Below are positions 2,330 through 48,454 of a DNA stretch of 64,000 nucleotides, piece after piece. The notes below the pieces were generated by a model. It had not been told where the DNA came from. It worked only from the letters and a program-made list of their open reading frames with translations, and searched no databases. The stretch lies in NCBI GenBank assembly GCA_964106915.2, contig OZ066916.1. One strand, given 5' to 3'. The stretch's first letter is position 1. Each line of letters opens with the position of its first letter. Both the position numbers and the translations under genes were made by a program. Source of the stretch: Podarcis gaigeae. Lineage: Eukaryota.

Positions 2330-4131
2330 AGCTTGCTTTGGGCAGGAAAAAGCAACTAGCAAATTTAATAAATAATAATAATAATTTTGGACTATAACTC
2401 CCACGAGTTGCAGCCAGCACTGCTACTGAATTCCAAAATATCTGGTCCATGGCGGCAAAGGCTCCTATAGATGGAGTTTTGCAGAATATGCTGTTGGGAA
2501 GGAGGTCGCAGATCGAAGTCAGCTGAAGCTCATAAGCATTTTGAGATAAACACACGTATTATTTTTGATGGTGACAGCTAGTGGGTGAAGGATTTCTATG
2601 TGCAGCAGAGTTTGTGGACGGGGGCATGTGCATGAGGCATGCTGAGGTGCAAGTATGCTACATGGATCCCCTCACACATTCTCCTCATGGTGTCTGAATC
2701 TCTGTTGGATGAGTTGGCACAGACTTGTGAAATGAGTGCAGAGACTGAAAAGGTCATATGAAAGCTTTTATTTGCGGTGGCTGCAATGGTCCCCTCCACT
2801 ATCGAAGCCATCACTAGATATTGTGGTCATAAGCTAGTTTTTGAAAGCTGTAATGGGAAGACTTTGCCCTGAAAGGTTGGCAAAAAATACATTCACCCTC
2901 TGCACTCCCTCCATCAAGGTTAAGGTGTATATATGTGTAAGTAAAACCATATTATCTAAAAGACTCCGCTGTGCCTCATTTTTCCAATGGAAACATGAAC
3001 CCTGGATAAGGGCAAAGACTCCTGGAACCTCACACCACTTGGGAGAGATTGGGGTGGCCCTTAACAAGATGTTCTCTTCACATCATGTGAATGGTAGAGA
3101 AAGGATTCTGTCTTATTTTCTGTTGTTCACCCTCCGGAGCAGATCTGTGGAGCAGGCACAAGGAGAGAAGCAGCCAGGGTTGTTCTGTACACAAACAGAA
3201 GTTCTAGTGCTAGTGGAACTACTTCTCTGGACACCACCCTTTCTTTTAATCCTTCTTTCAAGGTGCTCAGGACAACTTTGTGTCCAGAGCTGACAACAAA
3301 CCGGCAGTGCAATCCTATAGACGTCTACTGAAATGTAAGGCTAGATGACTTCATTGTGACTTACTTTCAGGTAATTGTGTGTAGGAATACAGCCTAGATC
3401 AATAATTTGACCAAGTGAGTGCAGATGCTACTTAATAGTTTTCACTGAGGCCATGAAACCTTGAGCGCATGGCTATCAAGGTTTGGGGGTGGAGGAGGGA
3501 GAGAACTTGAACGTTGAGACCCACGGAATCATAAGCTTGGGAGTGTCCGGAACCATATTCCCGATCACTTCCACCCATTTTGTCTTGTCTGAAAATCTGC
3601 TATTGAGCACAGAGTTTGCACCAACAAGGGTGTCAGGACTGGACAGCCTTCTCGCCCTCCCCACGTCTTACTACTCTAGGGATTGCTATGCTGTGGAATG
3701 GCAGGCGACCCCACCAACATTTTCTTTTGGATGCACATTTCAATTCACCTTTTACAATGTCAAGATAATAACTCTACAGTGTTGAAGAGAGCATACCACG
3801 AGTATCAAGACTAGATGCTAGAAAGTGACTTATTTGTGGCTAAAACAGAATCCACTTTTGCTCTGACCCTTACCTGTCCTTCAGTCACAAATCCACTGAT
3901 ATAAATTCACAAGCTGTTTCATGTTACTTTAGGTAACACATTACCTATTGTGGATAAAGGCCTGTGAATAAAATACCTACTTCTTGTTAAAAAAGAAGAC
4001 TGCTATGGCTTCTAAACCTTGACTTATATAGTATTCACTGGCTGTAGGTCATGATGTCTGCATCTTGCACTGGTTTGTTGACTGATTATGAATGCCTGAA
4101 AACCACACTGCTTTCCTCCTCCATCTTTCAG

Positions 4132-4425
4132 GCATCCTGACAGTTCTGGGAAATTCAGCTGTCCTGGCAGTAGCTGTGAAGCGCTCCTCCCATCTCAGGT
4201 CACCTGAGCTCCTGACGGTTAATTTGGCCGTAACCGATCTTGGAATGGCCATCAGCATGTATCCCCTGGCTATTGCTTCTGCTTGGAACCATGCCTGGCT
4301 GGGGGGCGATGCAACTTGCATTTATTATGCCCTGATGGGTTTCCTGTTTGGTGTCGCCAGCATGATGACCTTGTCTGTGATGGCTGTAATCCGCTTTCTT
4401 GTAACCCACTCTTCAAAGTCCAATA
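4132..4425 (+). CDS. OPN5L2: OPN5L2 coding exon (TM1-TM3)
   Basis: ctttcag|GC ... CAATA|gtgagt, 294 nt, phase 1-1; ILTVLGNSAVLAVAVKRSSHLRSPELLTVNLAVTD...VIRFLVTHSSKSN. Confidence 0.93.
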
Positions 4426-6648
4426 GTGAGTAACAAAGCACAGAAGGGTGGCAAAGGTGAAACAATTTCAAAGCTTTAGACTTCATGTCAAGGCCAAGGG
4501 AATAATATTTTAAAGAGCCTATTAGACCTTTTCTGTGTGTTTATAGATTAGATATATTCAGCATTACTGCAGTAAACAATGGGGGCGGATATACAGTCTG
4601 GCCGTAAACATGTTTTGAGCTGTAAACTGAAATGCATAATACCTTGTAGGAGTTGGCACTGTGGTGCTGGTGTGAAAAACACTGTTCTTCTTTACATTGG
4701 CTGTGTACCTCTGCTACTAGCCAAAGATAGTTAACCACATCTGGTGACCAATGGAAATGTCCTAAGCTTCCCTGAGAATGCTTTAAGGAGGCCTGTAAAT
4801 GTTGCCAGGCAATATACACAAAAGTATCACACTAGACAAGTGCGTTCTAAAGTATGTCTATATAGCCATAACTCAAACAGTTATTTTTGACGGAGATCAT
4901 GTACATAATGTCTCCACAGCCCGAGCGAAGGGTCATGGCTTACAGGGCATGCAGAAGATCCCATGCTCAGTCCTTGCCATCTCCAAATAGAACCTGGGGA
5001 GTCTGAAACCCAGGAAAGCTGGACAACAGAACGACAGGGATAATTGCCTGGCAGATTTCTATGTTATTCAAATAGTGTTGGTGTCTATAGTCTACTTTCT
5101 TTTCTTTTCCTAGGTAATACAATCAACAGAAAAGTCATCCATGTTTCTATTGCCTTGATCTGGCTGTATGCAGCCCTCTGGGCCATGTTGCCTCTGCTAG
5201 GCTGGGGGCATTACGGCCCAGAACCATTTGGCACTTCCTGCACCATAGCCTGGAGCCAGTTCCACAACTCGGCTAATGGGCTTTCCTTTATTCTGAGCAT
5301 GTTTATTCTGTGTACAATTCTGCCAGCAATTACCATCACCATCTGTTACTTGGGTATAGCCTGGAAGGTTCATAAAACCTATCAAAAGATGCAGAACTTC
5401 AACAGGACTTCAAATGCAGCAAAGCTGGAGAAGAAATTGACATTGGTGGGTATGTGTTGTTGTGAGCAGAGTATTTTTGTATTTTAAAGAGCAATAGGAA
5501 CACAGTGTTCCTTTGACTCAGACATTGATTCTGTCCCTACAGATTGAAAATTATTGTCAAAATATTGGGGAAATGCCAAAGCACTTATGGATGCTGTGGA
5601 CTGGGCTGTTTGTGTGTGTTTGCCTTCATGTATGGTTTGTGTTCCATTTGAGTTGCAGACATTGAGCAACTCCTCTGTTTTTCAGTTGTTAGATTCATTG
5701 GTATGAAATCTTATTGTATTAATGCGAAATAATATTAATATTCAAAATATTTATACCCCACACATCTGGTTGGGTTTTCGCAGCCACATACATACTGGGG
5801 ACTAACTTAATGATGAACCTGTATACTGTAAGACTCTCAGATCTTGCAATACATGGGCTCATAGAGGAACCATGTGGTATATATATTGCTATTGTATGAG
5901 ATGTTGAGGTCCTGCCATATTTTCTTCTATAGGACTATAATTTGAAACAGGTGACATTCCATTATGATGTAAAGCATCTGATAAACACAAAGGATGCTGT
6001 TCTTAATTTCTTATCCTGATCTTGTGTTATTTTATTCTGCTGGAGGGCTGCTGTAGTGCAGAGGATACTGCTTTTGGGTCTTAGGATAAAATGGACAGCC
6101 TAAAATGAATGCAAGAGCCAATTGTTTAAATATCTCTTAAATGTTAAAGCACTAATCCTTCATTTCTCTCTCACCGATTCAAAATAACAGATAGAGAAGG
6201 AGAAAATATAAAAAGCCAGCCAGTAACTAACTATAAGTGGTTGTTTTTACAGATGGCTGTACTGATCAGTGTGGGATTCCTCAGCGCATGGACACCATAT
6301 GCCGCAGTCAGCTTCTGGTCAATATTTCACTCCAGTGAATCAATACCACCCATCGTTACCTTGTTGCCATGTCTTTTTGCTAAATCCTCAACAGCCTACA
6401 ACCCTTTCATTTACTATGCTTTCAGCAAAACTTTCCGGCGTGAAATTAAGCGCCTCCAGTGCTGCTGTAGTCAGAAAGTTTACTTTAGCACCAAGCATAC
6501 CAATAGCCATGTGTCAGTGATTTGGTCAGGAAGGGATAACGCGCACATTTCTTCATTCAGAAAGACAGATAGTGGAGAAGTTCCAAATCCATCCGCTGCA
6601 GCTGCAGAAGTCTTATTTGAAAACGTTGCTCTAAAGTCCAGATCATGA
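4132..6648 (+). CDS. OPN5L2: Opsin 5-like 2 (Opn5L2 / opn8 group neuropsin), coding exons 4132-4425, 5114-5445, 6253-6648; first coding exon not located
   Basis: Three AG/GT-bounded exons with compatible phases give an uninterrupted 7TM opsin: GNSAVLA, NLAVTDLG, YGPEPFGTSC (counterion Glu181, Cys187, Thr188), AWTPYA, FAKSSTAYNPFIYY (Schiff-base Lys, NPxxY). Closely resembles chicken Opn5L2 as I recall it. Confidence 0.92.
5114..5445 (+). CDS. OPN5L2: OPN5L2 coding exon (TM4-TM5, ICL3)
   Basis: ttcctag|GT ... ACATTG|gtgggt, 332 nt, phase 1-0; contains WGHYGPEPFGTSCTIAW. Confidence 0.93.
6253..6648 (+). CDS. OPN5L2: OPN5L2 last coding exon (TM6-TM7, C-tail)
   Basis: ttttacag|ATGGCT to TGA at 6646-6648; contains AKSSTAYNPFIYY. 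AATAAA at 6697-6702. Confidence 0.93.
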   Translation: MAVLISVGFLSAWTPYAAVSFWSIFHSSESIPPIVTLLPCLFAKSSTAYNPFIYYAFSKTFRREIKRLQCCCSQKVYFSTKHTNSHVSVIWSGRDNAHISSFRKTDSGEVPNPSAAAAEVLFENVALKSRS

Positions 6649-7203
6649 AATCTCCCAGGGAAACACTGCAAGGGCAGTAATTCCTAGGAAGTTTATAATA
6701 AACTGCTTGCAGGATAATTCCGAGGTCTCTGTTCTTTAAAAAAAAGGACCTGCCGGCAAGAACTGAGGAATCTCAATGAATTTTGAGCACATGGACTAAG
6801 TTAGAGTTTACTATACTGTATTAATAGCTGGCAGAGGAGGTATTTAGGCAGTTAAAAAGAGATTGTAATGTCAGTGAACTTGGCATTTGTTTTTGTGCTT
6901 TTGTTGGACTGTATGGGATGCTGAGCTCAGGTGTCAATGATGGAGTCTCAAGAGGCACAGGCGTCTTGAAGAATAATAAGAAAAGACCTTTGCTTAACGG
7001 GCTGTTAACACCTCCCCCTTCGATACTTCTATTAAGGCTGTTGAGCAAGAACCTTACAAAAAATGGACTTTTCATAAAAGGGTCGCTCTATCCGTCTTGT
7101 GCATGTCATCTCAGTACTGGATTTGTGAGGTCACAGAACTGGAAACCGCCCACCAACTTCAGACTCTACAGAGGCTATTGAGAAGGAAAAGAAAAAGGTA
7201 GAC

Positions 7204-7338
7204 CAGGCATAGGCAACCTTCGCCCTCCAGATGTTTTGGACTACAATTCCCATCATCCTTGACCACTGGTCCTGTTAGCTAGGGATCATGGGAGTTGTAG
7301 GCCAAAACATCTGGAGGGCCAAAGGTTGCCCGTGCCCG
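7204..7338. mobile_element. Short hAT-type MITE
   Basis: Terminal inverted repeats CAGGCATAGGCAACCTT / AAGGTTGCCCGTGCCCG around a palindromic core (GGACTACAATTCCCATC...GGGAGTTGTAG). Same family as 23756-23891. Confidence 0.75.
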
Positions 7339-7772
7339 TCTGGAGGCAGACCACCAGGGGTAGGAAATGCATATTTGTCAATCTGACAAGCAAACAAAGC
7401 TAGGACAACGAGACTGAACTGAACTGAAAGGGCAAGAGGCATGTGAATAAACAGTATGAAACAGCAGGACATAATTTCACCACCTTTCTGTATCAGTAAC
7501 ATTTATTTTAAATTGTAATTTGCATTTCCAAAGATCTGAAATGTATTTCAGATATAATGCCGTCTTATATGCAAAAATTTTAAATTTACTCATTTCATTT
7601 AGATTCTTTGATAGATCTTACATACATATGTAATAATATTGCAGATGATTTCCCACTTTCTTAGAAAGCATAAGGCAACACCAGAAATTGTAGATGATTT
7701 AAATTTTTTATCAACAAATCACAATGCATCAACACAAACTATAAGATATAAGGTTTGTTATGAGACAGAGGT

Positions 7773-9069
7773 TTACAGAGATTGCTGCCTCATTTCCAAG
7801 CATTTCTCGATATCATCAAGAACTTGGACAGCTGCCTTTGGGATTCGGGTTCCAGGGCCAAATATATTGGAAACACCAGAGGCATACAAGAAGTCATAAT
7901 CCTGTGCAGGAGAAAAACAGACATAAAACATACCGTACATGCAAACTTTGTAAAGTAAAATTCTGCAGAACATATGCTAAAAGAGCAGAGTTTAGCGATG
8001 GCAGGTCAGGAGGTAGCACACATGGAGAAGGGAAAATAACTTGGTATGCTAGCTATGGGGGAAAACAGTGATGCTCTCACCTACGCAAACCCCGCCATGT
8101 GTGCAAAGTCCTAGTGACTACAAGTTCAAGCAATCTCTGCTCTAGGTGTTATCCTATGTAACATAAAGAATGAAATCATCAAAAGTGGTGAACATTTTCA
8201 CCTCTGCTCCAAGACAACCAGAGACTTGTGGCTCTATACAAATCTTTTGCCAGGTGCAACAATTATACCAAGGTCAAGAGATTCAAAGCAGAAAAGCAAA
8301 TTCTACCAGCCCTTTCTTCCCTTCTTCTTCCTAACTATTTAAACCAATTCATGAACTAAGAACTTCTACACTGACCACTAATAATGAAACATATGTTGTA
8401 GATATTTCTCCACATTTATTATGCTATTTTTGTGATATACAAATGACATAAGAATACTTGGTACAGTATACTTATTTGTATAACAATATTCTTGTTTATA
8501 ACCCCACCCCACCCCACCCCACCCCCCAGAAAAAAACAAATTCTGGAAGAAGAAAAATTATATAGTTTCTATTTCAGTAAAGGAAACTGGTCCCTTTTTT
8601 CTTCATTTCTTAAAATGTTTATGAATATTTTTAAATTTAAAAAGTGATATTTACATTATTTGATTATATTGGCAGTTTTCGAAAGCTTTTGGGAGACTGC
8701 TTCTCAACTGCATTGTTCTGTGAACCTTAAACCTAGAAACTACAGCGCTTTCCCAAATTTGCTGAAGGATTTCCACATTTCAAAAGCTAGATTCTATTTT
8801 AAAAGCCTTTCAATGGTGTTCATTTGCCTGGAGGAGGAGGAGGAAAAAGTAGATGGAGACCCCACCTCACTGGGAACAATTTAATCATCTCACAACAAGC
8901 CATCTTGTGATGGTGGTGCACAGTACCTGGGGAGGAATGGCGCCTCCACACATGAGGAGAATGTCTGGGCGGCCAAGGGACAAGCCCTTCTGTGGCCAGC
9001 AGCCAAGGTGCTCGCCCCCACGCAATGCACATCCGCATCTACCGCCTGCTGGGCCACTTCACGGGGTGC
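7773..9069 (-). pseudogene. MMUT: Methylmalonyl-CoA mutase relic: only the last two exons (8927-9069 frameshifted; 7773-7901 intact)
   Basis: Exon 7901-7773 (gcacag|GAT, 129 nt) encodes [42 protein letters not shown], the MMUT C-terminus. Exon 9069-8927 (cctag|GCA..CAG|gtactg) encodes [26 protein letters not shown] and, in another frame, [17 protein letters not shown]. It is 143 nt, and the conserved 39-nt KTLVPELIKELNS segment is replaced by 14 nt (25-nt loss). No upstream MMUT exons were found by eye. Minus-strand AATAAA at 7502-7507. Confidence 0.88.
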
Positions 9070-9904
9070 CTAGGAAGAGAAAGCAAAGGAAGTGTCAAAC
9101 AATATGGGAAAGAAGAATGCATAAAACCTAACACTGCATGCAGACCCAGGCTTCTTTTTTCACAGAGAAGAGCGACAAGAAAACACTAGGCACCAGCATG
9201 CACCGCTCAAGGCTGCTACTGGCATTTAGGTTAGACAATATGGGCGCCCAGAAAGTAGAGTACAGAGAGGAACATTGCCACCTATCGATGACATCTTCCA
9301 ACTCGGGAATCTGTAAAATCATCCTAGTACAATATATTCTGATAGTTACCTTTTGTGTGAACAGTAAATTGAAACAATAGGTGCAAATATTTTTTTTAAA
9401 ATTTATTTTACAAATTTATAAATTGCTTAAAAGCCTGAGGCCCACAAAGCTGTGTACCAAAATCTAAAATACCAAAAAAAAAAAAAAATGTTGTGGCTGC
9501 TTCTGGGTTCCCTCCTGCCTTGGATATATATTCAGGTTTTATTTAAAGAACGGTTTTCCTTAGCTTCCTAATCCCCACCCCTTTGCCCCCCAGTGAAGGA
9601 AATCAGGCTGAGAGACTGACTTCCCATAGCGAGGTTCACAGCTGAATGCCTTTCCCCCATCCCAAACATCCCTCTAGTCCCACACCTGGACCCCCAGGAG
9701 CCGGGGAGAGATGCTCTGGACCACAGCCTCCCCCCCCCCCAATACCTGGCAGGGGCTGCTTCCAGGGCTGGGCCCAGCAACGGCCTGGGGCGGCGCCTGC
9801 TGAGAGGCAGCGGGACAAGGCTGCGCTTCCACCTCATCTCCGCAACCTTCAAGGAAAGACACAGAAGCCCAACTGGACAAGAGCCAAGAACCCTTAACGA
9901 TTGA

Positions 9905-10333
9905 TTAAGGTGCCCCGAGGCCGCCCCTCTCTTCCTCCTCTTCCTCCAGGTCTTCCAGGATGAGCTCTTCTGAAAGGGAAAGAAGAGAAGGCTGCCAGTT
10001 AGAGGGGCTTCTTACACACACACACACACACAGAGAGAGAGAGGGACTTTCTGAAGACATCCCTAGAAACAGACATTACCTTCTGGGGGACTCTCCTTCG
10101 TTTTTGCCTGAGCCTGCAGGGAAAGAAAGAGCCACATGGGATGTGATGCTCTACAGCTCAAAACAGGCCTCAGACAGAGACCTTTCCTGAGAAATCTGAG
10201 GGACTGGAATCAGCTTCTATGGGCTGAAAGGTTTTACCTTGGAGGTCCTTTCAAAAAGGGTCCTGCAGGGGGGGCGGGCGGGGGGCGGAGAGGGGGACTC
10301 GGGGACGGGGCAAACTTTATTTTTCTTTGCCAT
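9905..10333 (-). CDS. Putative unannotated small spliced ORF (64 aa from the internal ATG; exons 10364/10333-10238, 10113-10080, 9969-9905)
   Basis: Three pyrimidine-rich acceptors (ctctttcttttctag, ctttctttccctgcag, ctctttccctttcag) and two strong donors (AAG|gtaaaa, AAG|gtaatg), with phases 0 and 1 matching. Product MAKKNKVCPVPESPSPPPARPPCRTLFERTSKAQAKTKESPPEEELILEDLEEEEEERGGLGAP*. Minus-strand AATAAA at 9538-9543. No family recognised. Confidence 0.45.
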
Positions 10334-10672
10334 CCGCGAAATGGCTTTTCGCAATCTGGTAAACCTAGAAAAGAAAGAGCAAAATGTGAGAAATGGGGCT
10401 CACAGTTCATCCTCTCCGGATCTACTTCCCAAAACTGCTTTTTGCATTCATGCCTCTGAGCTCCCTATCACCCCAGAATTCAGTTGCACATCAAGGCACC
10501 CCAAGAAGAAGGAGAACACATTGAGACAGAATTTGACTCTGAAGGTTAATGGGCAAAATTTAGGCCACAACTTTATTGAGGACAGCAATGTGAGTGGTAT
10601 TGGGTTTCATTGTTGAGGGTTTTTTCAGTGATTTTACCTCAGGAAATAGGCCCCTGAAACGGACTTTGGGCA

Positions 10673-11592
10673 CACATACAACAAAAACCATAATAACACT
10701 AATAACACAGTTTGACAATTCAGATTTGGATACACTGATATACCTATGACTACACCTTTTTAACAATATTTTCCTGCCTATCTCTCCTCCCCCTACTTCC
10801 CACCGTTATCCGCCTTATCGCTTAAATATTCCTTCCAGATTTCTTCATATTTATCCATTCTTAATTTGTGTCCACATGCAATTTGTTTGTATGTAGCTAG
10901 TCTGTCCATATTATCAATTCATGTGCTCAATGGAATCTTTTTGCGGCTCTTCCAAATCATCAAAACAAGTTTTTTTGCTTCTAATATAGCACGGTACACC
11001 CATTTGTTTTGACCCCTTGTAATCTCCCATGTTTCCAAAATATAATTTAGAATTAAATTTAATTCCGCTAAATAACAATTTCTTTTTATTACTCTTGCTA
11101 TAAATATCCTCACCTCACTCCAAAATGATCTTATTATCGGGCATTTAATCATCATATGTACTAAGTTCGCATTTTTACTCCCACATCTGCAGCAGTTGTC
11201 CGCGCTTGTTATTTTCTTCTGGTATAGTTTTGCTGGAGTCCAGTGGACTCTGAATATTATTTTCTGTTGAAGAAGTCTTAGTCTTAGATCCACAGAGGCT
11301 ATTTCTGTTGATTTTATACTTGACTCCCATATATTATTTGTTATCTGTACCCCTAACTCTTCACTCCATTCTTGTCTATCATATTCTAAATCATATTTCT
11401 TCCTGTTGAGTAGAGTTTTATATAGTGCAAGTGTAGAGTTTTTTGTTTTTGCTGCAGAGATTAAATCTTGTAGCAGCATGGGTGTTTCCGATGCTGCTAT
11501 AGCGTCAGGGCCAAACTGCCTTTCCAACATATGTTTCAATTGGATGTATTGCCATTGTGTTTCACTGGTTAATCCATACTTTACTTGCAAAT
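10673..11592 (-). mobile_element. 5'-truncated L1/Tx1-clade LINE (ORF2 C-terminal region)
   Basis: ORF 10919-11590 contains RVHWTPAKL and the Cys-rich CxRC..HMMIKCP..FW motif typical of the vertebrate L1 ORF2 end. Bounded by the exact 26-bp direct repeat TAGGCCCCTGAAACGGACTTTGGGCA (10647-10672, 11593-11618). Confidence 0.85.
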
Positions 11593-13503
11593 TAGGCCCC
11601 TGAAACGGACTTTGGGCATGCCTGGCTTAGGCATTGCCAATAACTATATCTGACTCCTGCCCACCTTGCAGGAAGTCTGGAAGAGTAAACCACCAACAGA
11701 GGGAGCTCCATCAATGGCGACCAACTGAAACTCACCCCGGGGTTCCCGCTGGGTCCTGGCATGGCCCTAGCCTCCCAAGCAGACTTTGGACAAGATCCGG
11801 ACCCGCAGATTCCTTTACCGGAATACCCTTGTACCTGGAGGGGCAGGTGATGGCCGCTCCTCCCCCCCCCCACATTTCACTAAGCCAATGCCTAACCGCC
11901 AAACCTTACAAAGTTGTGACAATTGCTAAGAGGTAGACAAAAACCAAGAGGCCAATACCAATTTGCCAAATGGAAAAAATTCCTACCCGGCCCCTGTTCC
12001 AAAACAGGCGACCAACCGAAGTCCAGAGCAAGGCCAAAGCACAAACCCAAATCGAGGGTGGGTGGGCAGGTGTTTGGCAGCGCAATCCCAGGTAAACCCC
12101 CCCCAACGCTGCGCCGCTGTCTTTTAAAGGCCCCCCCTCGATCACACCACCACTCCCAAGGAAGGGGGGGCTGCACCTATGGCCTGTGCGCAACGCGGAC
12201 CCTCAATTAAGAGGGTCCGATATGCTGAAAGAAATCCTACTTACATGCTCTCTCTACTCTCACAAGCACAGAATGATCCAAGCATAGGAGATCCCAGACC
12301 TTCTAGAGCTCTGGCGACCGATGAGCCAACAGAGGGAGATGTCACAATGAACCTTGTGATGCAGCACCCCTGGGCCCTGAGAAAACCAGCAGCCACAAGC
12401 CCTGCTCCTCTTAAGGGACGCGACTAAGTTTTCTTAGTCAAATTTATCCGTAGAAACTATTATGATGATAGCAAAATATTATTGCTTTCTTTAACACATT
12501 ATAAAACCAAACCACATTATAAAACCAGTTCATAAAACGAAAGAAAATGAATATTGAGGATTGCTTTCTTGAAAGCATCACCACACCCAAGACGATGTGT
12601 CAGGCTCCTGGCATGGGCGTAGCCAGGGAGGCGGGGGGGGGAGCTGCCCCCTCTAAATCAAGTAAATCAATAAAAATACTGAACTAACTGACCAATTGTG
12701 TCACAGATAACTCGGCTCTGCCCTTAGCCTCCAAAATAAAGCCTGCCCCACAATAAATGCTGTTTGCACCCATGGCTCCAAATCCAGGATGGTGCTTTCA
12801 AGGACGCAATTTCAGCCCCATTTATTCTGATCCTTATGAAGAACTGCTCCCTTTTCCCCATCCTCTTAACAAATAAATTGCCACGGTGGCAGGTTTGATC
12901 CCCAGATGGGCCAGCCATATATTCCTGCATTGCAGGGGGTTGGACTAGATGATCGGCTGGGTCCCTTCCAGCTCTACAATTCTGTGATTCTTATGTTCTC
13001 AAGCTCCCCTGGTGCCAGCCAGGTGTGGCCACTCAGTTTCCTCAAGTACTTGAGGAATGGCAGCCTGTCATAAGAGGATGACAGCGGATGGGCGGCAACA
13101 AGCCTCTCCTATCTGCTGGGATTGCCAGCCGGCATATGCTGTGCCTGCTCAAAGATGCCTGTTGCTTACAGCTACAGCCATCTCATTCTAGTTTGTGTAA
13201 AGGAGTTTCTAGCCCAAGTATCTGCCACGGAAATAAAAGGTCTGGAAAGGTTAACCTCGCTCAGAGCGGCCAAGGCGGCATCACTTGGGAAGAGAATACT
13301 CTTTAGTATTTCATATCCATCTCTGACTAAACAACACAACAGGGTGGCCTTTCAACCAACTTTAGATGATAGAAGCCAAGTTTTCACCATTTATTTAGCC
13401 ACTTTTGATTTTCACAAATTTAAGCATGTGTGTTAAGCCTAAGGCCTCAATTCTGTGTTCATTTGATTGCAAGTGGGTTCCACACTGAATTCAGCAGAAT
13501 TTA

Positions 13504-14975: not shown

Positions 14976-15280
14976 CATGCTGATGGCCATTCCAAGATCG
15001 GTCAGGAGCTCAGGTGACCTGAGATGGGAGGAGCGCTTCACAGCTGCTGCCAGGAAGGGCTGAATTCCCCAGAACTGTCAGGATGCCTGAAAGATGGAGG
15101 AGGAAAGCAGTGTGGTTTTCAGGCATTCACAATCAGTCAACAAACCGGTGCAAGATGCAGACATCATGACCCACAGCCAGTGAATACTCTATAAGTCAAG
15201 GTTTAGAAGCCGTAGCAGTCTTCTTTTTTAATGAGAAGTAGGTATTTTATTCACAGGCCTTTATCCACAATAGGTAATGT
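14976..15280 (-). pseudogene. OPN5L2: Inverted duplicate of the OPN5L2 intron end plus the first ~130 nt of the exon (copy of 3938-4259)
   Basis: The reverse complement aligns to 3938-4259 with 9 point substitutions, one small +1 complex change and an 18-nt deletion. Confidence 0.95.
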
Positions 15281-15524
15281 TGTCTACTGAAGTTCTCCCC
15301 CTGGGCCAGCAGGGGGTACTGTAAATAGTTTTCACTCAGGTCCACATATGCAAATAAGGGATTGAAAGTGACCTTCAGTGATTGGATAGTGGTTACTGTT
15401 GCATTGTAGTGGAGCTCTATATAAGCAGGTTGGCTGAACCCTTCAGTTCAGTTCTGGCCTGTGAATAAACAAGAGCTGTTTGAAGAATCGCTGTGCCTCT
15501 GATATGTTCACCCACAGCTTAACA
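15278..15524 (+). mobile_element. Solo LTR
   Basis: TGTT...AACA termini, TATATAA near 15418, AATAAA near 15464, ~250 bp; no matching TSD. Confidence 0.65.
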
Positions 15525-15769
15525 GTTCCTGCCTTGCAGGGGCTGGACTAGATGACCCTAGGGTCCCTTCCAACTCTACAATTCTGTGATCCATTGCTGC
15601 ATCTTCACTTATTGCGAGGTATTTCAAGGGAAAGAGTGATACAGGCAGGCTTTCCCCTGAGAGGCTCATCTGGTACCTCCACGAGGCTCCTTAAGGGGAA
15701 AACCTTTCTCTTCATTTCTGCCTTCCGCTCTTGTGTTCCTTATGCATTTTCTGTTTTAATCTTGTGTTT

Positions 15770-16350
15770 TGACGCGGCTCCCTCCAAGCCTTTAAAACAA
15801 AGCGGCGCCCAGGGCGGGCTCCTTCGGCTCCTCCTCCACGCCTGTCGGAAACTGCGCTCGGGAGCCGCTGGTGTCGGCGGAAAACCCTTCGCCCGCATCC
15901 CTTTGGCGCCGCCCCCGCCACTGCAACGCGCATGCGTGGTCGGGGCAGGGCCGAAGGAAGAGTCCGGCTCTCCGGGAGGGAGGCGGAGGGGCGGGGCCGG
16001 GCTCCGTCCGAGGGGGGCTTTCCGGCAGAGGCGCCCCCCCCCCGAGACCGCGGACGAGAAGCTCCGGAGGTTTCCTTGGGGTCCCTTTGGCCAGGGTCCC
16101 CCCCCCCGGCAGCGGCAGGATTCTTTCCCGGAGGCGCCCCGAGGAGACGCGGCCAGTTGGGCCGCCCGCCTCTCGCCCGCCCTTGCAGCTCCCGGGGGGG
16201 GGGGGGTCTGCACCCCCCTGGTCCCGATCTGGCCAACTTCTCCGTAGACCCGGCTGTGTGGAGGGAGGGGCTGCTTTCCAGGCCGTGGCTCCCGGGAGGG
16301 GAGGGCGGTGCTTTGGCTCGGGAGAGGGGAGGGGGGGGCAGCTCCGGATT
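15770..16350. promoter_or_regulatory. CpG island with promoter-like motifs and no identifiable downstream gene
   Basis: Dense CpG; NRF1-type palindrome ACGCGCATGCGT near 15926; GC boxes (GGGGCGGGGC near 15988; CCGCCC). Confidence 0.75.
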
Positions 16351-18644
16351 TAGGATGCTTCAGGCAGTTGCCCCACACAGAGCGCCAGCAAAGGGGTTGC
16401 AAAATTGAGAGGATTCATTTTGGGGGCACCAAGTTTTGGCCTTGCACAGGGCACCACATTTAGGAAAGATTCTGGTCTTGGCTGACCTCTTCCTTTCTTG
16501 ATATGGATCCAAGGAAAGTTGAAAGGCTTGCAAGTTCTCCCCAGAGGTGCAGCACGGTATTGAAGGAAATGTATTGGTTTACCTGTTTGGTGTATCTTCT
16601 CTTCTAGCACAGCAAGAATACTCCTCTCCCCAGAAGCCTGCCATTAGCTGGCTGGTCCAGCTCAGTAGGTGACAGTTCAGCTCACCACCCTCGCCCACTG
16701 TCTGCATGGCCCCGTCTAGGGTGCTGAGCACTGCAGTTTCAGGAGAAGCCACACCAGGCAAACTTCCTTTCCTGCATTACTGTTCATTGTAGTTTTGTTA
16801 GAATCAAGTTACCATTGCATGTGGATACATTCACTGCTTCTTTAAAATGGGGGGGGGGACCAGCTTGAGGGGGCCCAGTTTAGGTAAAAGCAGCAGTGTG
16901 AGGGCTGCTTTAGCCTTTCTCTGCCTGCCACTTCTCCATTCCTATCTACCCCCAACTGCTGCTCCCTCTGTGTGGTGCTCAATCCATGTTTGTGAGGGTG
17001 GAGTGTGAAAACAAACTGGAAATAGCTTGAGAGAAAGAAATCTTTCAGTTGAGAAGCAGGGTATGGGGGGGGGGGCTTTCCCTGCTCATTCTCTACTTAA
17101 ACCACCCTCTTCCAACAGTGTGCTTTTGAAATAAGTAGTAGATGACAGCTCTTACTTTCATGCATCTGCTTGCATTGTTGATGAGACAGGCGCTTGCAAA
17201 GCCTGTTATTCTGTGAGGTTTGGTCCCATTTGCGCTTTTTCCTCCAGCTCCAGCAGTCACTGTTTCTTCAGAACTCTGTTATGCATCCTAGTTCCCCCCC
17301 CCCCCCGATAGGATAAATGTATGTGTCAGCTAAGTGGAAACTTGGAGATTGCAACTTGAAATGTTGTCTGTGGTACGGTGGGATATTTATCCCTGGAACC
17401 TTCTTCCCATTTCTCTGCTTTTTCTCAAGTCTCACTTCCCAGCTGTTTTCCCAGGTTCCTTTTTCTTCCTTCCATTGCCTTGCTGCATGCTTCCACCTGC
17501 CACCTTGCCCTGGTCTCTCCATCCCTTAGTTTTACTATCTCCTGTGATCTCTTTCTAATCCTCAGCCTTCCCCATAAAGCTCTGCCTCTTCCTAGGGCCT
17601 GTGTGGTGTTTTAATCTTAGCCAAAATGACGACGTTCCTTTTTAACCTACAAGTTGAACTGAAATATTCTGGCAACTGTGCTCACTCAGCTCTTTGATAA
17701 TAATCTGTCAGAAGTGCAGTACGATATACTGAGTACCCCCCCCCCTTAATTTTATTTATATATATATATATATAGGCATAGTTCCTATTTGCATTTCACT
17801 GTCTTTTTTCAGTGCAGCAATGTGCTTGAGTTGTGTTACCATTAAATACTTGGGCAGCCCAGTGACTGGTGATGTGGCAACTGCTAAACACATTATTATG
17901 CTGTTACCATTATTGTGGTGTTAACATTGTAATCTTCTCAGGTATTTAATTACTTTTCCAAAGGCATCTATAAATTATCTTTCTAAGCAGCGTGCCAGCT
18001 GAGACATTAAAATACAGCTTTTCATTTAGAAAGGTTGCTGAAAAATAATTCATTCTTGTGGTTGGCTTTCTTATTTTAGTCTATTACCCCATCTTGTCTA
18101 AAACCAACATCAGTTTATTTTTAATCTGCATTAGCTATGGAGGTGTGTCGTGAATTTCAAAAAAAACATACCACTTACTCAGGATAATAAATATTTTGGG
18201 TTTACGAGCACAGTATTTCAAAATAATGTGTAGGTAGTTTTCAGCCGCAGTTGCAGGTGTAAAAGCTCAGTTGCAAATGGCATGTGCTAGTTTTCTGTCA
18301 TTGTACTAATGCTTCACACGGTACCTTGCTAATGCACAAAGGTTTAAAATAGTCCACATTTCTCTGGCAGATCAGGGGTTAGTTTGGGTCCCATAGGCTG
18401 CCTGTTCTGTCTGATGATACACTCACACCTTTGTAGTGCAGCAGCTGTTCTGCCTTTGGGCAGTCAGTTCTTGGATGTGCAGATCCAGGAAACCCCATCC
18501 ACTGAGAGCATCCTGCTCTGTTTTCATAATGTTAATTTAAAGCCTTGTTCTCGGATGGTTAAATAACAAGATGCCATATCATAATGACTACTTTTTGCAC
18601 AGCTGTGCAGTCAAGTTTGGATTTGTAGCCAGCTATTTCAGTTA

Positions 18645-25304: not shown

Positions 25305-34181
<8,877 letters not shown>

Positions 34182-43281: not shown

Positions 43282-46200
43282 ATAGAATCATAGAATCATA
43301 GAGTTGGAAGAGACCACAAGGGCCATCGAGTCCAACCCCCTGCCAAGCAGGAAACACCATCAGAGCACTCCTGACATATGGTTGTCAAGCCTCTGCTTAA
43401 AGATCTCCAAAGAAGGAGACTCCACCACACTCCTTGGCAGCAAATCCCACTGTCGAACAGCTCTTACTGTCAGGAAGTTCTTCCTAATGTTTAGGTGGAA
43501 TCTTCTTTCTTATAGTTTGGATCCATTGCTCCGTGTCCGCTTCTCTGGAGCAGCAGAAAACAACCTTTCTCCCTCCTCTATGTGACATCCTTTTATATAT
43601 TTGAACATGGCTATCATATCACCCCTTAACCTCCTCTTCTCCAGGCTAAACATGCCCAGCTCCCTTAGCCGTTCCTCATAAGGCATCATTTCCAGGCCTT
43701 TGACCATTTTGGTTGCCCTCCTCTGGACACATTCCAGTTTGTCAGTGTCCTTCTTGAACTGTGGTGCCCAGAACTGGACACAGTACTCCAGGTGAGGTCT
43801 GACCAGAGCAGAATACAGTGGCACTATTACTTCCCTTGATCTAGATGCTATACTCCTATTGATGCACCCCAGAATTGCATTGGCTTTTGTAGCTGCCGCA
43901 TCACACTGTTGGCTCATGTCAAGTTTGTGGTCAACCAAGACTCCTAGATCCTTTTCACATGTACTGCTCTCAAGCCAGGTGTCACCCATCTTGTATTTGT
44001 GCCTCTCATTTTTTTTTTTTGCCCAAGTGCAATACTTTATATTTCTCCCTGTTAAAATTCATCTTGTTTGTTTTGGCCCAGTTCTCTAATCTGTCAAGGT
44101 CGTTTTGATGTGTGATCCTGTCCTCTGGGGTGTTAGCCACCCCTCCCAGTTTGGTGTCATCTGCAAATTTGATCAGGATGCCCTTGAGTCCATCATCCAA
44201 GTCGTTGATAAAGATGTTGAATAAGACCGGGCCCAAGACAGAACCCTGTGGCACCCCACTAGTCACTCTTCTCCAGGATGAAGAGGAACCATTGATGAGC
44301 ACCCTTTGGGTTCGGTCAGTCAGCCAGTTACAAATCCACTGAGTGGTAGCATAGTCAAGACCGCATTTTACCAGCTTCTTTACAAGAATATCATGGGGTA
44401 CCTTGTCAAATGCCTTGCTGGAATCAAGGTAGGCTACATCCACTGCATTCCCTTCATCTACCAGGCTTGTAATTCTGTCAAAAAACGAGATCAGGTTAGT
44501 CTGACATGACTTATTTTTCAGAAATCCATGCTGACTATTGGTGATCACAGCATTCCTTTCTAGGTGCTCACAGACTGTTTGCTTAATGATCTGCTCCAGA
44601 ATCTTCCCTGGTATTGATGTCAGACTGACTGGGCGGTAATTATTTGGGTCCTCTCTTTTCCCCTTTTTGAAAATAGGGACAACATTTGCCCTCCTCCAGT
44701 CTGCCGGGACTTCGCCTGTTCTCCAGGAATTCTCAAAGATGACTGCCAGTGGTTCTGAGATCACATCTGCCAGTTCTTTTAATACTCTTGGATGCAGTTC
44801 ATCTGGCCCTGGAGACTTGAATACATCTGGACTAGCCAAGTATTCTTGTACTATCTCCTTAGTTATTCTGGGCTGTGTTTCCTCTGCTGAATCATTTGCT
44901 CCAAATTCTTCAGGTCGGGCATTGTTTTCTTTATCGGAGAAGACTGAGGCAAAGAAGGCATTGAGGAGTTCAGCCCTTTCTGTGTCCCCTGTTTGCATTT
45001 CACCATCTTCTCCTCTGAGTGACCCCACTGTTTCTGTGTTCTTCCTTTTGCTACGAACATACCCATGAAAGCCTTTTTTGTTGCTTTTAACCTCTCTAGA
45101 AAGCCTGAGTTCATTCTGTGCTTTAGCTTTTCTAACTTTGTGTCTACACCTGCTGGCTATTTGTTTGAATTCCTCTTTGGTGGTTTCCCCCCTTTTCCAT
45201 TTTTTGTACACATCCTTTTTTAATCTTAACTCAGTTAAAAGTTCTTTAGATAGCCACTCTGGCTTCTTTAGGCACCTTCCATGTTTCCGTCTCATTGGTA
45301 TTGCCTGAAATTGTGCTTTTACTATCTCCCTCTTAACAAACTCCCAGCCATCATGAACTCCCTTTCCTTTTAGTATTACTGTCCATGGGATCTCACCCAG
45401 CACTTCCCTAAGTTTTATGAAGTCGGCTTTCTTAAAGTCAATAAACTGAGTCCTAGTATGCTTGGCTGCTCCTTTCCGCTGTATAGTAAACTTCATAAGA
45501 GCATGATCACTCGTGCCTAATGATCCTTCCACTTCTACCCCACTAACCAGGTCATCAACATTGGTTAGGACCAGATCTAAAATGGCTGTTCCTCTTGTTG
45601 CTTCTCCCACTTTCTGGACAATGAAGTTATCTGCAAGGCCAGTGAGGAATCTGTTTGACCTTATGCTCTTGGCTGAGTTTGACATCCAACAAATATCCGG
45701 GTAATTGAAGTCCCCCATTACTACTATCTTCCTTCCTTTTGCATGCTTGGCCATCTGTTCCAGGAAGGCATCATCTATGTCCTCCGTTTGGCTTGGGGAT
45801 CTATAGTAAACTCCCACAATGAGGTCCCTGTTATTCATCTCTCCCTTAATTTTGACCCAAATGCTCTCACTTTGGCTTCGAGGTTCTAAATCTTGGATCT
45901 CTTCACAGGTATACACATCCCTGACGTATAACGCCACTCCTCCTCCTTTCTTGTCTGGTCTGTTTCTCTGAAATAGATTGTATCCCTCCATTTTTACATT
46001 CCAATCTTGGGACTTATCCCACCAGGTTTCAGTGATGCCTATTATGTCATATTTAGTTTGCTGTACCAAGAGCTCAAGCTCATCTTGTTTATTTCCCATG
46101 CTTTGCGCATTAGTGTACAGACATTGAAGTCCATTAATCATTCCCCCGTGTCTCTTATTTAAGGATTTTTTCCTCCCACCACTAGGTCTGCGTGCTGTTT

Positions 46201-46594
46201 GCTCCATTTGGTCTATGACATTTGGATGATCATCTTCATCAATTGATAGACTCCTACCTTCAGGAGCACTGTCTCCCTCCCCCACATTAGTCAGTTTAAA
46301 GCCCTCCTGATGAGGTTTCTGAGATTTTTGGCAAAAAACATTCCTCCCAACCATTGTGAGGTGCAGCCCATCGCTTGCCAGAAGTCCATCTTCAAGAAAC
46401 TGCAGTCCGTGATCTAAGAATCCAAACCGTTCCTGTTTACACCATTTGCGAAGCCAGTTGTTCACTTCCACTATTTTCCCCTCTCTCCCTGGGCCACGTC
46501 GTTCAACTGGGAGGACAGATGAGATGACAATTTGTGCATTTAATTGCTTCAATTTCCTGCCCAGAGCCTCATAATCTCTTTTGATCTTCTGGAG
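43282..46594 (-). mobile_element. Young CR1 LINE, 5'-truncated within ORF1 (esterase end plus ORF2 APE endonuclease and reverse transcriptase)
   Basis: ORF1 remnant with DGLHL; ORF2 motifs YTNAQSM, GITETWW, MGDFN, SDH, SGVPQGSVLGP, KFADDTKL; (ATTCTATG)n 3' tail at 43282-43302. Only two frame breaks, both in homopolymers. Confidence 0.97.
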
Positions 46595-48454
46595 ATAGGA
46601 TTCTGGAAATTTATAAATCACTAGTGCTAATTGCAGTTGTTCTGAGGGTCTCCAGTGGTGATTAGCTAAGATTCTGGGATATCATGGAATGTTCACAAGC
46701 ATTAGCTTAAAAATAATTGCAATTAAAATGTTTCGTACTCCAAAGTGACCACAAAAATGTGTACTATGAAGGCTCCTTAACTGCACTCTCAGAAAAGTGT
46801 CTCCATTCGTTTTTATGTTAGCTATCTTTCATTTTTCTTTGCAATAAAAGTCAACATGTCATGATAGAGGACATATAAAGGAAAGAATAACAAAGTATTA
46901 GAAATAGCACAATCTAAATTCTGAATCTGAAATTACATAATATGTAGATTTTGATCACTCATTCTGTTTCTGCTTCTATCGGCATATTAAGCACAAAACA
47001 AAAATATTTCCTTCCTGGCTGGATTACGAATCCTTCGCTCTCCTATCTCAGGCCAAAAGCAGTAACTAATTTAAACAACCTACTGTATTTTCTTGCTCTT
47101 GCAAAGTATATAGCTGGCAACATGTCATTGCTTTTTCCACAGGAAAACAGGAAGAAGAATTATGTCTTATTGCTACATTTTAGTCAACACACTCAATTCA
47201 GAATATGAACACAAGGTTTGGTAGAGCAAATCCAGGCATCCTTTTAGAAAGTGGGCCCTGGATTTTGTTGGGTTGTATTTTATTTCCTTCAGATTTCTTT
47301 CCATGTGCCCAGAAGACAGAATACATTCACACCCAGCCATGATAAATATAAACCAGCTCCTGTTTTATGCCACCAAAACTAAATCTAACAGGATCTAGGT
47401 AACCTAGATTCACTAAACTCCGCATCCTGCCCTTGCCAGCAAGCCAACTCAAATCTAATCTCATGCAGCCAACAAAGATGTTAATCTGCGTCACTAAAAG
47501 CACCAAGATTAACTGAGTGCAGGATTAATGCTGAGCTGTTTTTAGAGGCTAAGGCCATGGAATTTTGAACTTGCTGTGAAAATTATTGGAGGCTAGATCA
47601 CTAACATGAGGACTTATCACCCTTTGTTGATGTTTGTGCAATGACTTAACAATTAGCAAACCTATTCATCCTCACAGGTCTTCTAAAATTAGTCCCTGGA
47701 ACTGAATGCCTTGCTGAGTTTATGCTGCTGTGCTGGGTTTTAAGTGGCTAACTGAATGGACAGTAATGTTTTATCATTTAATGAAGAGATGTAGAAACTT
47801 TTTCAGCCAAAGGGCAACTTGTGGGGGATCCTCATGCCAGTGGTGGGCATGCCAGAGGCAAATATAATTGGAGCGACAGACGTGGTGTCTAGCTTTGCAC
47901 TGTAGGCCGCATCCCACCCACACAAAAGCCAGAGGTTTCTACACACAGAGAGACACCGTCTCTCCATCGGCCATGTGAGCAAGCAAGAGGCATTATTACA
48001 GTCCAAGGAGACCTTCCAGACAGACAATGCACGTGAGGAGGGGGCATGGCTGTATCCAGGGTAATGGGGTGTGGCCTAGGGAGAGTCCCAAGGGCCACAC
48101 TGAGAGCCCTGGGGGCTGCATTTGCCCCCTGGGCCTGAGGTTCCCCATCTCTGTTTTATTCTTTGTTGATGGACATTGAATAGTGTTTAACGTAAGTACA
48201 TTTCCACAGCAGACTCCCATGACTGCCCATCTGGAATGCATAATTTTTTAAGAAATTAAAGTTATCTGAGGCAGTAAGCTATATGAACTAGTTTCTTTTG
48301 AAAGGCAAGCTTGCTGGCAGATTAAGTCAGATTACGAATTCTGAACAGTGATTCTATCTCACAATGAGCAGCTGATATTTCTTCCTTCTCCTCCTGGTCC
48401 AAGGGCTTGAAAGAAAGGGGGGGTTAAAAAGCTGGAACTAAGTGGTTTAGACCA

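What the first reader, a model, noticed from the sequence alone, without database searches (positions are those of the whole stretch)
9515..10364. Unannotated compact multi-exon gene candidate where upstream MMUT exons should be
Seen: on the minus strand, three short exons (10364-10238, 10113-10080, 9969-9905) have strong polypyrimidine-AG acceptors, two AAG|gta donors and ~110-125-nt introns. Their phases match and give MAKKNKVCPVPESPSPPPARPPCRTLFERTSK-AQAKTKESPPE-EELILEDLEEEEEERGGLGAP* (basic start, Pro-rich middle, acidic end). The frame is also open upstream of the ATG (FTRLRKAISR). An AATAAA (9538-9543) and a downstream T15 tract follow. The ORF track misses this because it is spliced. 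Inference: a lineage-specific or newly arrived small gene at a rearrangement junction. I recognise no family.
Basis: partly seen in the sequence, partly recalled or inferred. Interest (0 to 1): 0.8.

Follow-up and report, generated by a model that had tools for sequence, protein, structure and literature searches.

The report
Small lacertid-specific orphan gene
The three short exons are real and belong to a small, fast-evolving gene of unknown function. Automatic annotation already lists its relatives as "uncharacterized protein" in wall lizards (Podarcis).

Summary
The coordinates, splice signals, exon phases, stop codon and AATAAA are as described. The three acceptors rank among the 11 best of 4312 AG sites on that strand. 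No such cluster occurs elsewhere in the window or in 80 shuffled strands.

A search of 1.84 billion proteins with the exon-1 peptide hit only Podarcis. The hits are P. muralis LOC114593548 (several isoforms) and two P. lilfordi hypothetical proteins.

The models also revealed an upstream coding exon (12285-12245). Its ATG and donor are in phase with the 10364 acceptor, which gives an 88-residue product.

Two P. lilfordi loci are colinear with the window. One of them also carries the MMUT relic and the OPN5L2 end, so the gene did not arrive recently.

Against this, both P. lilfordi copies carry disabling changes, and the exons diverge faster than their introns.

There is no Pfam family. The model predicts one helix and is otherwise disordered.

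RNA contigs from relatives showed no junctions, but this test had little power.

Verdict: a real, lineage-restricted small gene that is probably protein-coding. Relatives are already annotated, and the function is unknown.

The parts
12245..12285 (-). Upstream coding exon A (41 nt). It has an ATG at 12285-12283 and encodes 13 codons plus 2 nt. The donor GT is at 12244-12243. The frame stays open a further 46 codons upstream, so the true 5' end is unknown.
Evidence: tblastn shows that the N-termini of P0004 (P. muralis X3) and P0001/P0003 (P. lilfordi) match here. Alignment to L001/L002 is; coordinates are.
10365..12244 (-). Intron between exon A and exon B (1880 nt). It holds an L1-type LINE fragment at 10607-11644 (ORF2 tail 10919-11590).
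   Evidence: There is a weak zf-RVT hit. The stretch 10607-11644 is absent from both P. lilfordi loci.
10238..10364 (-). It holds an internal ATG at 10333-10331 in a good Kozak context (G at -3 and at +4).
   Evidence: Sequence. The best hits are P0001 (E 3.6e-7) and P0002 (E 7e-5). It is 78% identical to P0005 residues 1-29. The acceptor AG is conserved in L001 and L002; the donor is conserved in L002 and lost in L001.
10114..10237 (-). Mini-intron 1 (124 nt).
   Evidence: It is 85-88% identical to the P. lilfordi copies, which is more conserved than the exons beside it.
10080..10113 (-).
   Evidence: It matches P0005 residues 38-50. It is 21 nt (7 codons, in frame) shorter than in both P. 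lilfordi copies. The acceptor and the GTAATG donor are conserved in all three.
9970..10079 (-). Mini-intron 2 (110 nt), with a (CT)n(GT)n microsatellite.
9905..9969 (-). It encodes the acidic tail and ends at stop TAA 9907-9905.
   Evidence: It matches P0005 residues 48-64 and P0002 residues 112-122 (91%). It has an in-frame 9-nt indel against P. lilfordi, where the stop lies 8 codons earlier.
9515..9904 (-). 3' UTR, with poly(A) signal AATAAA at 9543-9538. A T15 run follows at 9488-9474.
   Evidence: The AATAAA and the about 45 nt around it are conserved in L001.
7773..9069 (-). Context: an MMUT relic just downstream. Exon 12 (9069-8927) is frameshifted by a deletion of about 28 nt. Exon 13 is 7901-7773.
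   Evidence: Exon 13 matches human MMUT residues 699-739 at E 5e-18. In L002 the same exon 12 is broken by an insertion of about 1.1 kb.

Best explanation
This is the single-copy counterpart, in a lizard about 10% diverged from Podarcis (inferred to be another lacertid), of the Podarcis gene annotated as 'uncharacterized protein LOC114593548'.

Gene model (minus strand). There are at least four exons: A 12285-12245, B 10364-10238, C 10113-10080 and D 9969 to about 9515. A 1.9-kb first intron carries a lineage-specific L1 fragment, and two mini-introns of 124 and 110 nt follow. The stop is at 9907-9905 and the poly(A) signal at 9543-9538.

Product. From the ATG at 12285 the product has 88 residues. 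From the internal, better-context ATG at 10333 it has 64; P. muralis isoforms of both kinds exist.

Shown here: homology, shared exon structure and phases, shared genomic context, and a frame-specific excess of synonymous change.

Inferred: the protein is mostly disordered. It has one basic helix across the A/B junction, a Pro/Ser-rich linker, and a conserved hydrophobic-acidic tail motif (L-[IV]-[IL]-x-D-[LI]-E...). It probably acts through short linear motifs, as a small binding or adaptor protein that evolves fast, rather than through a fold or an enzymatic activity. The tissue of expression and the binding partner are unknown.
For: 1. Homology. phmmer of the exon-B peptide against 1.84 billion representatives gave only two hits, both Podarcis (names).
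2. Structure. Acceptors are top-ranked. 16 of 18 splice dinucleotides are kept across the window, L001 and L002. The poly(A) signal is conserved.
3. Indels. In exons C and D they are 21 and 9 nt. The net in exon B against L001 is 9 nt. Intron indels are mostly not multiples of 3.
4. Coding signal. In a spectrum-preserving randomisation, 26 synonymous changes were observed against 16.5 expected (P=0.0024) versus L001, and 22 against 14.9 (P=0.019) versus L002. The other frames show no excess. The two comparisons share a branch, so they are not independent.
5. Context. L002 is colinear with window 12318-6455, including the MMUT relic and the OPN5L2 end. P. muralis models continue into a segment matching human MMUT 544-577 at E 2e-12.
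6. Fold. AlphaFold2 on the family alignment gives one helix (residues 8-27, pLDDT 73-84); the rest scores 56-64. No Pfam family was found.
Against: 1. Both P. lilfordi copies are disabled relative to this model. L001 has lost the donors of exons A and B (GT>TC, GT>GA). L002 has ATG>ATA in exon A, the internal ATG changed to AGG, and +5/-2 nt indels that shift the frame through the most conserved part of exon B. Both P. lilfordi copies share a 2-nt insertion in exon A.
2. The exons are less conserved than their introns (73-83% against 85-91%). The apparent synonymous divergence (about 0.49) far exceeds the intron divergence (about 0.14). This is unexplained.
3. A second frame is open through all the exons, and the sequence is low-complexity (C-rich and purine-rich tracts).
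4. No spliced contig across 10238/10113 or 10080/9969 was seen in four probable RNA contig sets from three related organisms. This is weak evidence, for four reasons: the threshold was 90% likeness, the exons diverge fast, the tissues are unknown, and no RNA run of the window's own species exists.
5. The coding-signal statistics rest on about 70 codons and on comparisons that share a branch.
Confidence: 0.6

Rival explanations
1. It is a transcribed and spliced locus that is not (or is no longer) protein-coding. It would be a lineage-specific long non-coding RNA, or a decaying orphan gene whose open frames persist because of C-rich and purine-rich low-complexity sequence.
For: Both P. lilfordi copies carry start-codon, donor or frameshift lesions. 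The exons evolve faster than the introns. Two of three frames are open through all the exons. There is no domain and the model is mostly disordered.
Against: The excess of synonymous change is frame-specific. Indels in exons C and D are in frame. The window copy is intact from ATG to stop across four exons. P. muralis models keep the same frame in two tandem modules.
Confidence: 0.3
2. The main product in this species is a chimeric transcript that runs from these exons into the MMUT relic exons 12 and 13, as the P. muralis models run into an MMUT exon-10-like segment. On this reading the small ORF is only its 5' part.
For: P. muralis isoforms X1-X3 join module exon D to an MMUT-derived exon. 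The relic acceptor at 9069 is strong (10.2). The exon B donor (phase 0) and the exon-12 acceptor (phase 0) would be in frame. A probable RNA contig of a relative runs unspliced from 9042 to 9463 and onwards.
Against: Exon D here has its own stop, has no GT donor after the acidic tract, and has a conserved AATAAA upstream of the relic. Relic exon 12 is frameshifted. No joint from the module to 9069 was seen.
Confidence: 0.05
3. It is a chance arrangement of splice-like signals in low-complexity DNA, with no gene.
For: The exons are short. The pyrimidine tracts ending in AG resemble each other. No junctions were seen in the runs laid.
Against: The acceptor cluster is unique in the window and absent from 80 shuffled strands. 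Independent gene models with the same exon boundaries exist in two Podarcis species.
Confidence: 0.02
4. The exons are the 3' end of a larger known gene: the OPN5L2 tail, MMUT itself, or a neighbour of LGALSL.
For: Exon B has an acceptor. The start of the peptide loosely recalls an opsin helix 8. An inverted opsin exon copy lies upstream at 15086.
Against: OPN5L2 is complete on the + strand, with its own NPxxY motif and tail in exon ~6240-6645. The copy at 15086 is a fragment of the exon that spans the first transmembrane helices (TM1-3). There is no similarity to MMUT or to any Pfam family. The upstream exon supplies an ATG that matches the start of the Podarcis proteins.
Confidence: 0.03

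Closest known systems
Podarcis muralis LOC114593548, 'uncharacterized protein', isoforms X1/X2/X3/X5 (XP_028577824-7; P0005, P0002, P0004, P0007)
   Same: It has the same peptide modules in the same exon phases. Exon B is 78% identical from the internal Met. Exon C and exon D motifs are shared. The N-terminus of X3 matches exon A. It is associated with MMUT-derived sequence.
   Different: P. muralis has two tandem modules, and its models read on into an MMUT exon-10-like segment and an intron. The window has one module with its own stop and poly(A) signal, and only MMUT exons 12-13 downstream. I could not fetch P. muralis DNA.
Podarcis lilfordi hypothetical proteins CAI5769198/CAI5769199 (locus L001) and the partial model on contig CANTUW010000667.1 (locus L002, P0006)
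   Same: Both loci are colinear: L001 with window 14720-9246, and L002 with window 12318-6455. Flank identity is about 90-92%. The exons, acceptors and poly(A) signal are the same.
   Different: Both copies carry lesions: lost donors in L001, and a lost ATG plus frameshifting indels in L002. L001 sits next to a serpin gene and lacks the MMUT relic. The L1 fragment in the first intron is absent from both.
Lineage-restricted orphan (taxonomically restricted) genes that encode short disordered proteins (general class; from established knowledge, not tested as a family)
   Same: It is short, with few small exons and no domain. It is predicted to be disordered, evolves fast, has variable copy number between close species, and has a narrow taxonomic range.
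   Different: Its origin (de novo, or from a diverged parent gene) is not established here. Expression and translation are not shown.

Membership tests
Podarcis LOC114593548-like small-protein family | Significant sequence similarity of the encoded peptide | tested here: met
   The exon-B peptide scores E 3.6e-7 (66% identity) against P0001 and E 7e-5 (70%) against P0002, the only hits among 1.84 billion representatives. It is 78% identical to P0005 residues 1-29.
Podarcis LOC114593548-like small-protein family | Same exon structure and phases (exon A with ATG, then B, C, D) | tested here: met
Splice sites align with the L001 and L002 gene models.
Podarcis LOC114593548-like small-protein family | Same genomic neighbourhood (beside MMUT-derived exons and OPN5L2) | tested here: met
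   L002 is colinear with window 12318-6455. The P. muralis models include a segment matching human MMUT 544-577.
Podarcis LOC114593548-like small-protein family | Intact open reading frame under purifying selection | tested here: inconclusive
   The window copy is intact, and the synonymous excess is frame-specific. However, both P. lilfordi copies are disrupted and the exons diverge faster than the introns.
Podarcis LOC114593548-like small-protein family | Transcribed and spliced at these junctions | tested here: inconclusive
   No joints at 10238/10113 or 10080/9969 were seen in X1, X2, X5 and X14. These are contigs of related organisms laid at 90% likeness or more, and no RNA run of this species was found.
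MMUT (methylmalonyl-CoA mutase) exons | Similarity to the MMUT protein | tested here: not met
   The candidate exons give no Pfam hit. They do not overlap the MMUT-like part of the Podarcis models. MMUT similarity is confined to 7773-9069.
OPN5L2 opsin C-terminal tail | The exons follow the seventh transmembrane helix (TM7) of an opsin that lacks its own tail | tested here: not met
   OPN5L2 has its own last exon, with NPxxY and a tail, on the + strand. The opsin copy at 15086 is a fragment of the exon spanning the first transmembrane helices (TM1-3).
Interspersed repeat / transposable element | Multiple copies, or high repeat-like depth | tested here: not met
   There is no second copy in the window. 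Contig depth over 9570-10357 is about 0-26, against thousands over the SINE at 12919-13115. The adjacent L1 fragment is a separate, later insertion.

The most novel reading that the evidence does not exclude
The gene was born within lacertid lizards from sequence lying just upstream of a truncated, dead duplicate of the essential MMUT gene. The relic's surviving splice acceptors first captured new upstream exons; P. muralis still shows this state, where the module is spliced into an MMUT exon. An open frame then came under selection, gained its own stop and poly(A) site (this window), and duplicated in tandem (Podarcis). That would be a dated, stepwise example of new-gene birth seeded by the leftover splicing signals of a broken gene.
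Probability: 0.2. Interest if true: 0.6.

Novelty: new member of a known kind. Interest (0 to 1): 0.35.

Why it matters
It adds a probably intact, single-module copy to a small gene family so far known only as automatic 'uncharacterized' models in Podarcis. It also corrects the gene model by adding an upstream exon and start codon.

Copies with one or two modules, with or without a fused MMUT exon, and intact or disabled, now exist in close relatives. Together they could serve as a small natural series for studying how a short lineage-specific gene arises, duplicates and decays next to a gene relic. It has no obvious medical or applied importance.

Tried and rejected
1. Opsin-tail idea. The start of the exon-B peptide recalls helix 8, and an opsin exon copy lies upstream at 15086. 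I rejected it because OPN5L2 is complete on the + strand and the copy is a fragment of the exon spanning the first transmembrane helices (TM1-3).
2. Divergent transcript from the LGALSL promoter. Rejected: LGALSL is on the minus strand and its promoter lies at about 34-35 kb.
3. snoRNA or other RNA hosted in the mini-introns. Rfam gave nothing relevant.
4. Repeat origin. There are no copies in the window and depth is low.
5. Word-index protein searches with the alternative-frame ORF (window:9571-9969:-) and with the exon-B peptide were blank.
6. Pfam scans on all exon peptides and on the Podarcis proteins were blank. The protein-atlas feature search gave no usable hit.
7. I could not fetch P. 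muralis DNA; the products are not on record.
8. A literature search for LOC114593548 found 0 papers. A findings search by sequence was blank, which means nothing.
9. The protein-guided dN/dS of 0.18 is biased by the alignment method. I replaced it with fixed-alignment three-frame controls.
10. The joined spliced protein was never sent to any search.
The N run at 1869-2068 was left alone.

Full report
**1. The observation**

- Exon at 10364-10238: 127 nt, acceptor ttttctag|, donor AAG|gtaaaa.
- Exon at 10113-10080: 34 nt, acceptor ccctgcag|, donor AAG|gtaatg.
- Exon starting at 9969: acceptor cctttcag|, TAA at 9907-9905.
- AATAAA at 9543-9538 and a T15 run at 9488-9474.

The phases fit. I scored every AG and GT in the window with a simple splice-site weight matrix whose frequencies I wrote from memory, so it serves only for ranking. 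The three acceptors are among the 11 best of 4312 AG sites on this strand. The same top set contains exons that are certainly real: the two MMUT exons at 7901 and 9069, and an opsin exon copy. A cluster of three such acceptors within 400 nt occurs nowhere else on either strand, and in none of 80 dinucleotide-shuffled strands. The pattern is therefore far beyond chance.

Two caveats apply. A second reading frame is also open through all three exons and runs on to 9568. The sequence is also low-complexity: a C-rich tract in the first exon and a purine-rich tract in the last.

**2. Homologues**

Pfam found nothing in any exon peptide. The word-index search was blank for the exon peptide and for the alternative-frame ORF.

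Among 1.84 billion representatives there were two hits: P0001 (E 3.6e-7) and P0002 (E 7e-5). Their clusters are Podarcis lilfordi 'hypothetical predicted protein' (CAI5769199 and CAI5769198) and Podarcis muralis 'uncharacterized protein LOC114593548' isoforms X1-X3. A further word search added isoform X5 and a second P. lilfordi model.

The hits end at the exon edges, and exon 1 is 78% identical from its Met.

The N-terminus of isoform X3 and of the P. lilfordi proteins (MLGSF..) matches 12285-12245. There, an ATG is followed 41 nt later by a good donor (CAT|GTAAGT, score 8.6) that is in phase with the 10364 acceptor.

The exon lengths are 41+127+34+65 = 267 nt, which gives 88 residues. P. muralis isoforms that start at the internal Met also exist (X1, X5), and that ATG has the better Kozak context.

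**3. Orthologous DNA**

Two P. lilfordi loci could be fetched.
- L002, an 8.6-kb unplaced contig, is colinear with window 12318 down to 6455. It therefore carries exon A, the module, the MMUT exon-12 relic and the end of OPN5L2. Flanks are 90-92% identical.
- L001, on chromosome OX395128.1, is colinear with window 14720-9246. It then holds 40 nt of the OPN5L2 last exon, a partial repeat of the upstream region and a serpin gene. It is a second, displaced copy.

L001 and L002 are 94% identical in their flanks. By peptide, L001 resembles P. muralis module 1 and L002 resembles module 2. The window's module looks equidistant from both. I read this as a single-copy state that predates the Podarcis duplication; that is an inference.

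The gene's position beside the MMUT relic is therefore shared with Podarcis and is not a recent arrival. The L1 fragment at 10607-11644 in the first intron is missing from both Podarcis loci, so it is a later insertion in the window's lineage.

**4. Gene structure across copies**

All four acceptors are AG in all three DNA copies. The exon C donor is GTAATG in all three, and AATAAA is conserved in L001.
- In L001 the donors of exon A (GT>TC) and exon B (GT>GA) are lost.
- In L002 the exon A start is ATA and the internal ATG is AGG. A +5 nt and a -2 nt indel put the best-conserved part of exon B into another frame, although the total exon length keeps the phase.
- Both P. lilfordi copies also have 2 extra nt in exon A.

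**5. Coding signal**

Indels inside exons C and D are 21 and 9 nt, and the net in exon B against L001 is 9 nt. Intron indels are mostly not multiples of three.

In the two other frames it is 0.9-1.85.

In a randomisation that keeps each change's base, target and CpG status, the window-L001 pair shows 26 synonymous changes against 16.5 expected (P=0.0024). The window-L002 pair shows 22 against 14.9 (P=0.019). The other frames show no excess. However, it rests on about 70 codons, and the comparisons share a branch.

One point remains unexplained. The exons are less conserved than their own introns (73-83% against 85-91%). Synonymous divergence (about 0.49) is several times the intron divergence (about 0.14), and CpG context covers only 13 of 53 exon differences. 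Possible causes are hypermutable low-complexity sequence, or gene conversion from older paralogous modules. I could not separate them.

**6. RNA**

No RNA run of the window's own species was found. I laid four contig sets that are probably RNA, from three related organisms, on 7600-13500 at 90% likeness or more. One of them contains a canonical spliced joint at 7900/8926, which is MMUT exon 12/13.

There was no joint at 10238/10113 or 10080/9969, and almost no depth on 10161-10357. This is only a weak negative, for four reasons: the flanks of these organisms are 91-97% identical to the window, the module's exons diverge two to three times faster, contigs drop rare forms, and the tissues are unknown.

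The P. muralis models have several isoforms. In NCBI's annotation pipeline this normally reflects transcript evidence; that is my background knowledge and was not checked here.

**7. The protein**

There is no Pfam family in the window peptides or the Podarcis proteins, and no usable protein-atlas hit.

AlphaFold2 on the six-row family alignment (first row P0004:1-86) predicts one helix at residues 8-27. This spans the A/B junction and the basic stretch, with block pLDDT of 73-84. The rest scores 56-64, mean pLDDT is 62.8 and pTM is 0.26.

The conserved elements are the basic helix, the K-N-K-V-C-P-x-P-E-S motif, a Pro/Ser-rich linker, and the tail L-[IV]-[IL]-x-D-[LI]-E-E. The tail resembles hydrophobic-acidic short linear motifs such as SUMO-interaction motifs. 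That is a resemblance from memory, not a test.

My working mechanism is a small disordered protein that acts through these motifs. I consider this inferred, with modest confidence.

**8. Context**

Positions 7773-9069 are a dead MMUT 3' fragment.
- Exon 13 matches human MMUT residues 699-739.
- Exon 12 has lost about 28 nt and is frameshifted.
- In L002 the same exon is split at the same place by an insertion of about 1.1 kb, and most of exon 13 is deleted. The relic was therefore already broken in the common ancestor.
- P. muralis isoforms X1-X3 continue from module 2 into a segment that matches human MMUT residues 544-577 (E 2e-12). The module thus lies where an MMUT intron once was, upstream of that exon.

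The most novel reading is that the relic's splice sites seeded the new gene. The evidence allows this reading but does not show it.

**9. Verdict**

The feature is real and reproducible. It is best filed as the counterpart of an already annotated but uncharacterised lacertid-restricted small gene, with a corrected four-exon model.

My estimates are: coding and functional in this species, about 0.6; spliced but non-coding or decaying, about 0.3.

It is of moderate-to-low general interest. It would be of some interest to people who study the birth and decay of young genes.

Noticed in passing
window 8927-9069 (-) and L002 5842-7098: MMUT relic exon 12 lacks about 28 nt after ..AAGH in the window, which causes a frameshift. 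In the P. lilfordi orthologous contig the same spot carries an insertion of about 1.1 kb, and most of exon 13 (window 7183-7878) is missing. The relic seems to have been broken before the two lineages split.
   Followed up: partly
window 9905-10364 versus L001 and L002 (alignment A3): The exons diverge faster than their own introns and flanks (73-83% against 85-92%). Synonymous divergence (about 0.49) is several times the intron divergence (about 0.14). CpG context explains only a quarter of the differences.
   Followed up: partly
window 10607-11644 (-): An L1-type LINE fragment (ORF2 tail 10919-11590, weak zf-RVT hit) lies in sense orientation inside the first intron of the small gene. It is absent from both P. 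lilfordi loci. A probable RNA contig of organism A spans its 3' boundary.
   Followed up: partly
window 3938-4159 (+) and 15059-15280 (-): A 222-nt inverted duplicate at 96% identity. It covers the end of OPN5L2 intron 1 and the start of exon 2 (the start of the exon that spans the first transmembrane helices, TM1-3). The copy at about 15 kb is truncated and has internal deletions. It lies close to where colinearity with L001 ends (window ~14720).
   Followed up: partly
L001 12585-15130: In P. lilfordi the displaced copy is followed by 40 nt of the OPN5L2 last exon (window 6451-6412, 95%). After that comes a partial second copy of the gene's upstream region (window 14525-12440), next to a serpin gene. 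This looks like a segmental duplication with an internal deletion.
   Followed up: no
window 7900/8926 (-): One contig of run X5 joins 7900 to 8926 with GT..AG ends on the minus strand, which is MMUT exon 12 to exon 13 splicing. I could not tell whether it comes from the relic or from an intact MMUT elsewhere.
   Followed up: no
window 9568-10362 (-), alternative frame: A second frame is open through all three exons and continues to 9568 (about 190 codons, very basic). It shows no excess of synonymous change (pN/pS 0.9-1.0) and found no homologues.
   Followed up: yes
window 15501-16500: A CpG-island-like stretch (GC 0.58-0.67, CpG obs/exp 0.54-0.73) with open frames on both strands and no Pfam hit. 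It lies about 3 kb upstream of exon A on the minus strand. Whether it is a promoter for this gene is unknown.
   Followed up: no
window 44006-46621 (-): An 871-residue LINE ORF with reverse-transcriptase and endonuclease domains and a weak GDSL-lipase-like N-terminus.
   Followed up: no
window 25305-25450 and ~33310-33421 (-): LGALSL exons lie on the minus strand. The GC-rich region at 33.5-35 kb is probably its promoter or first exon.
   Followed up: partly
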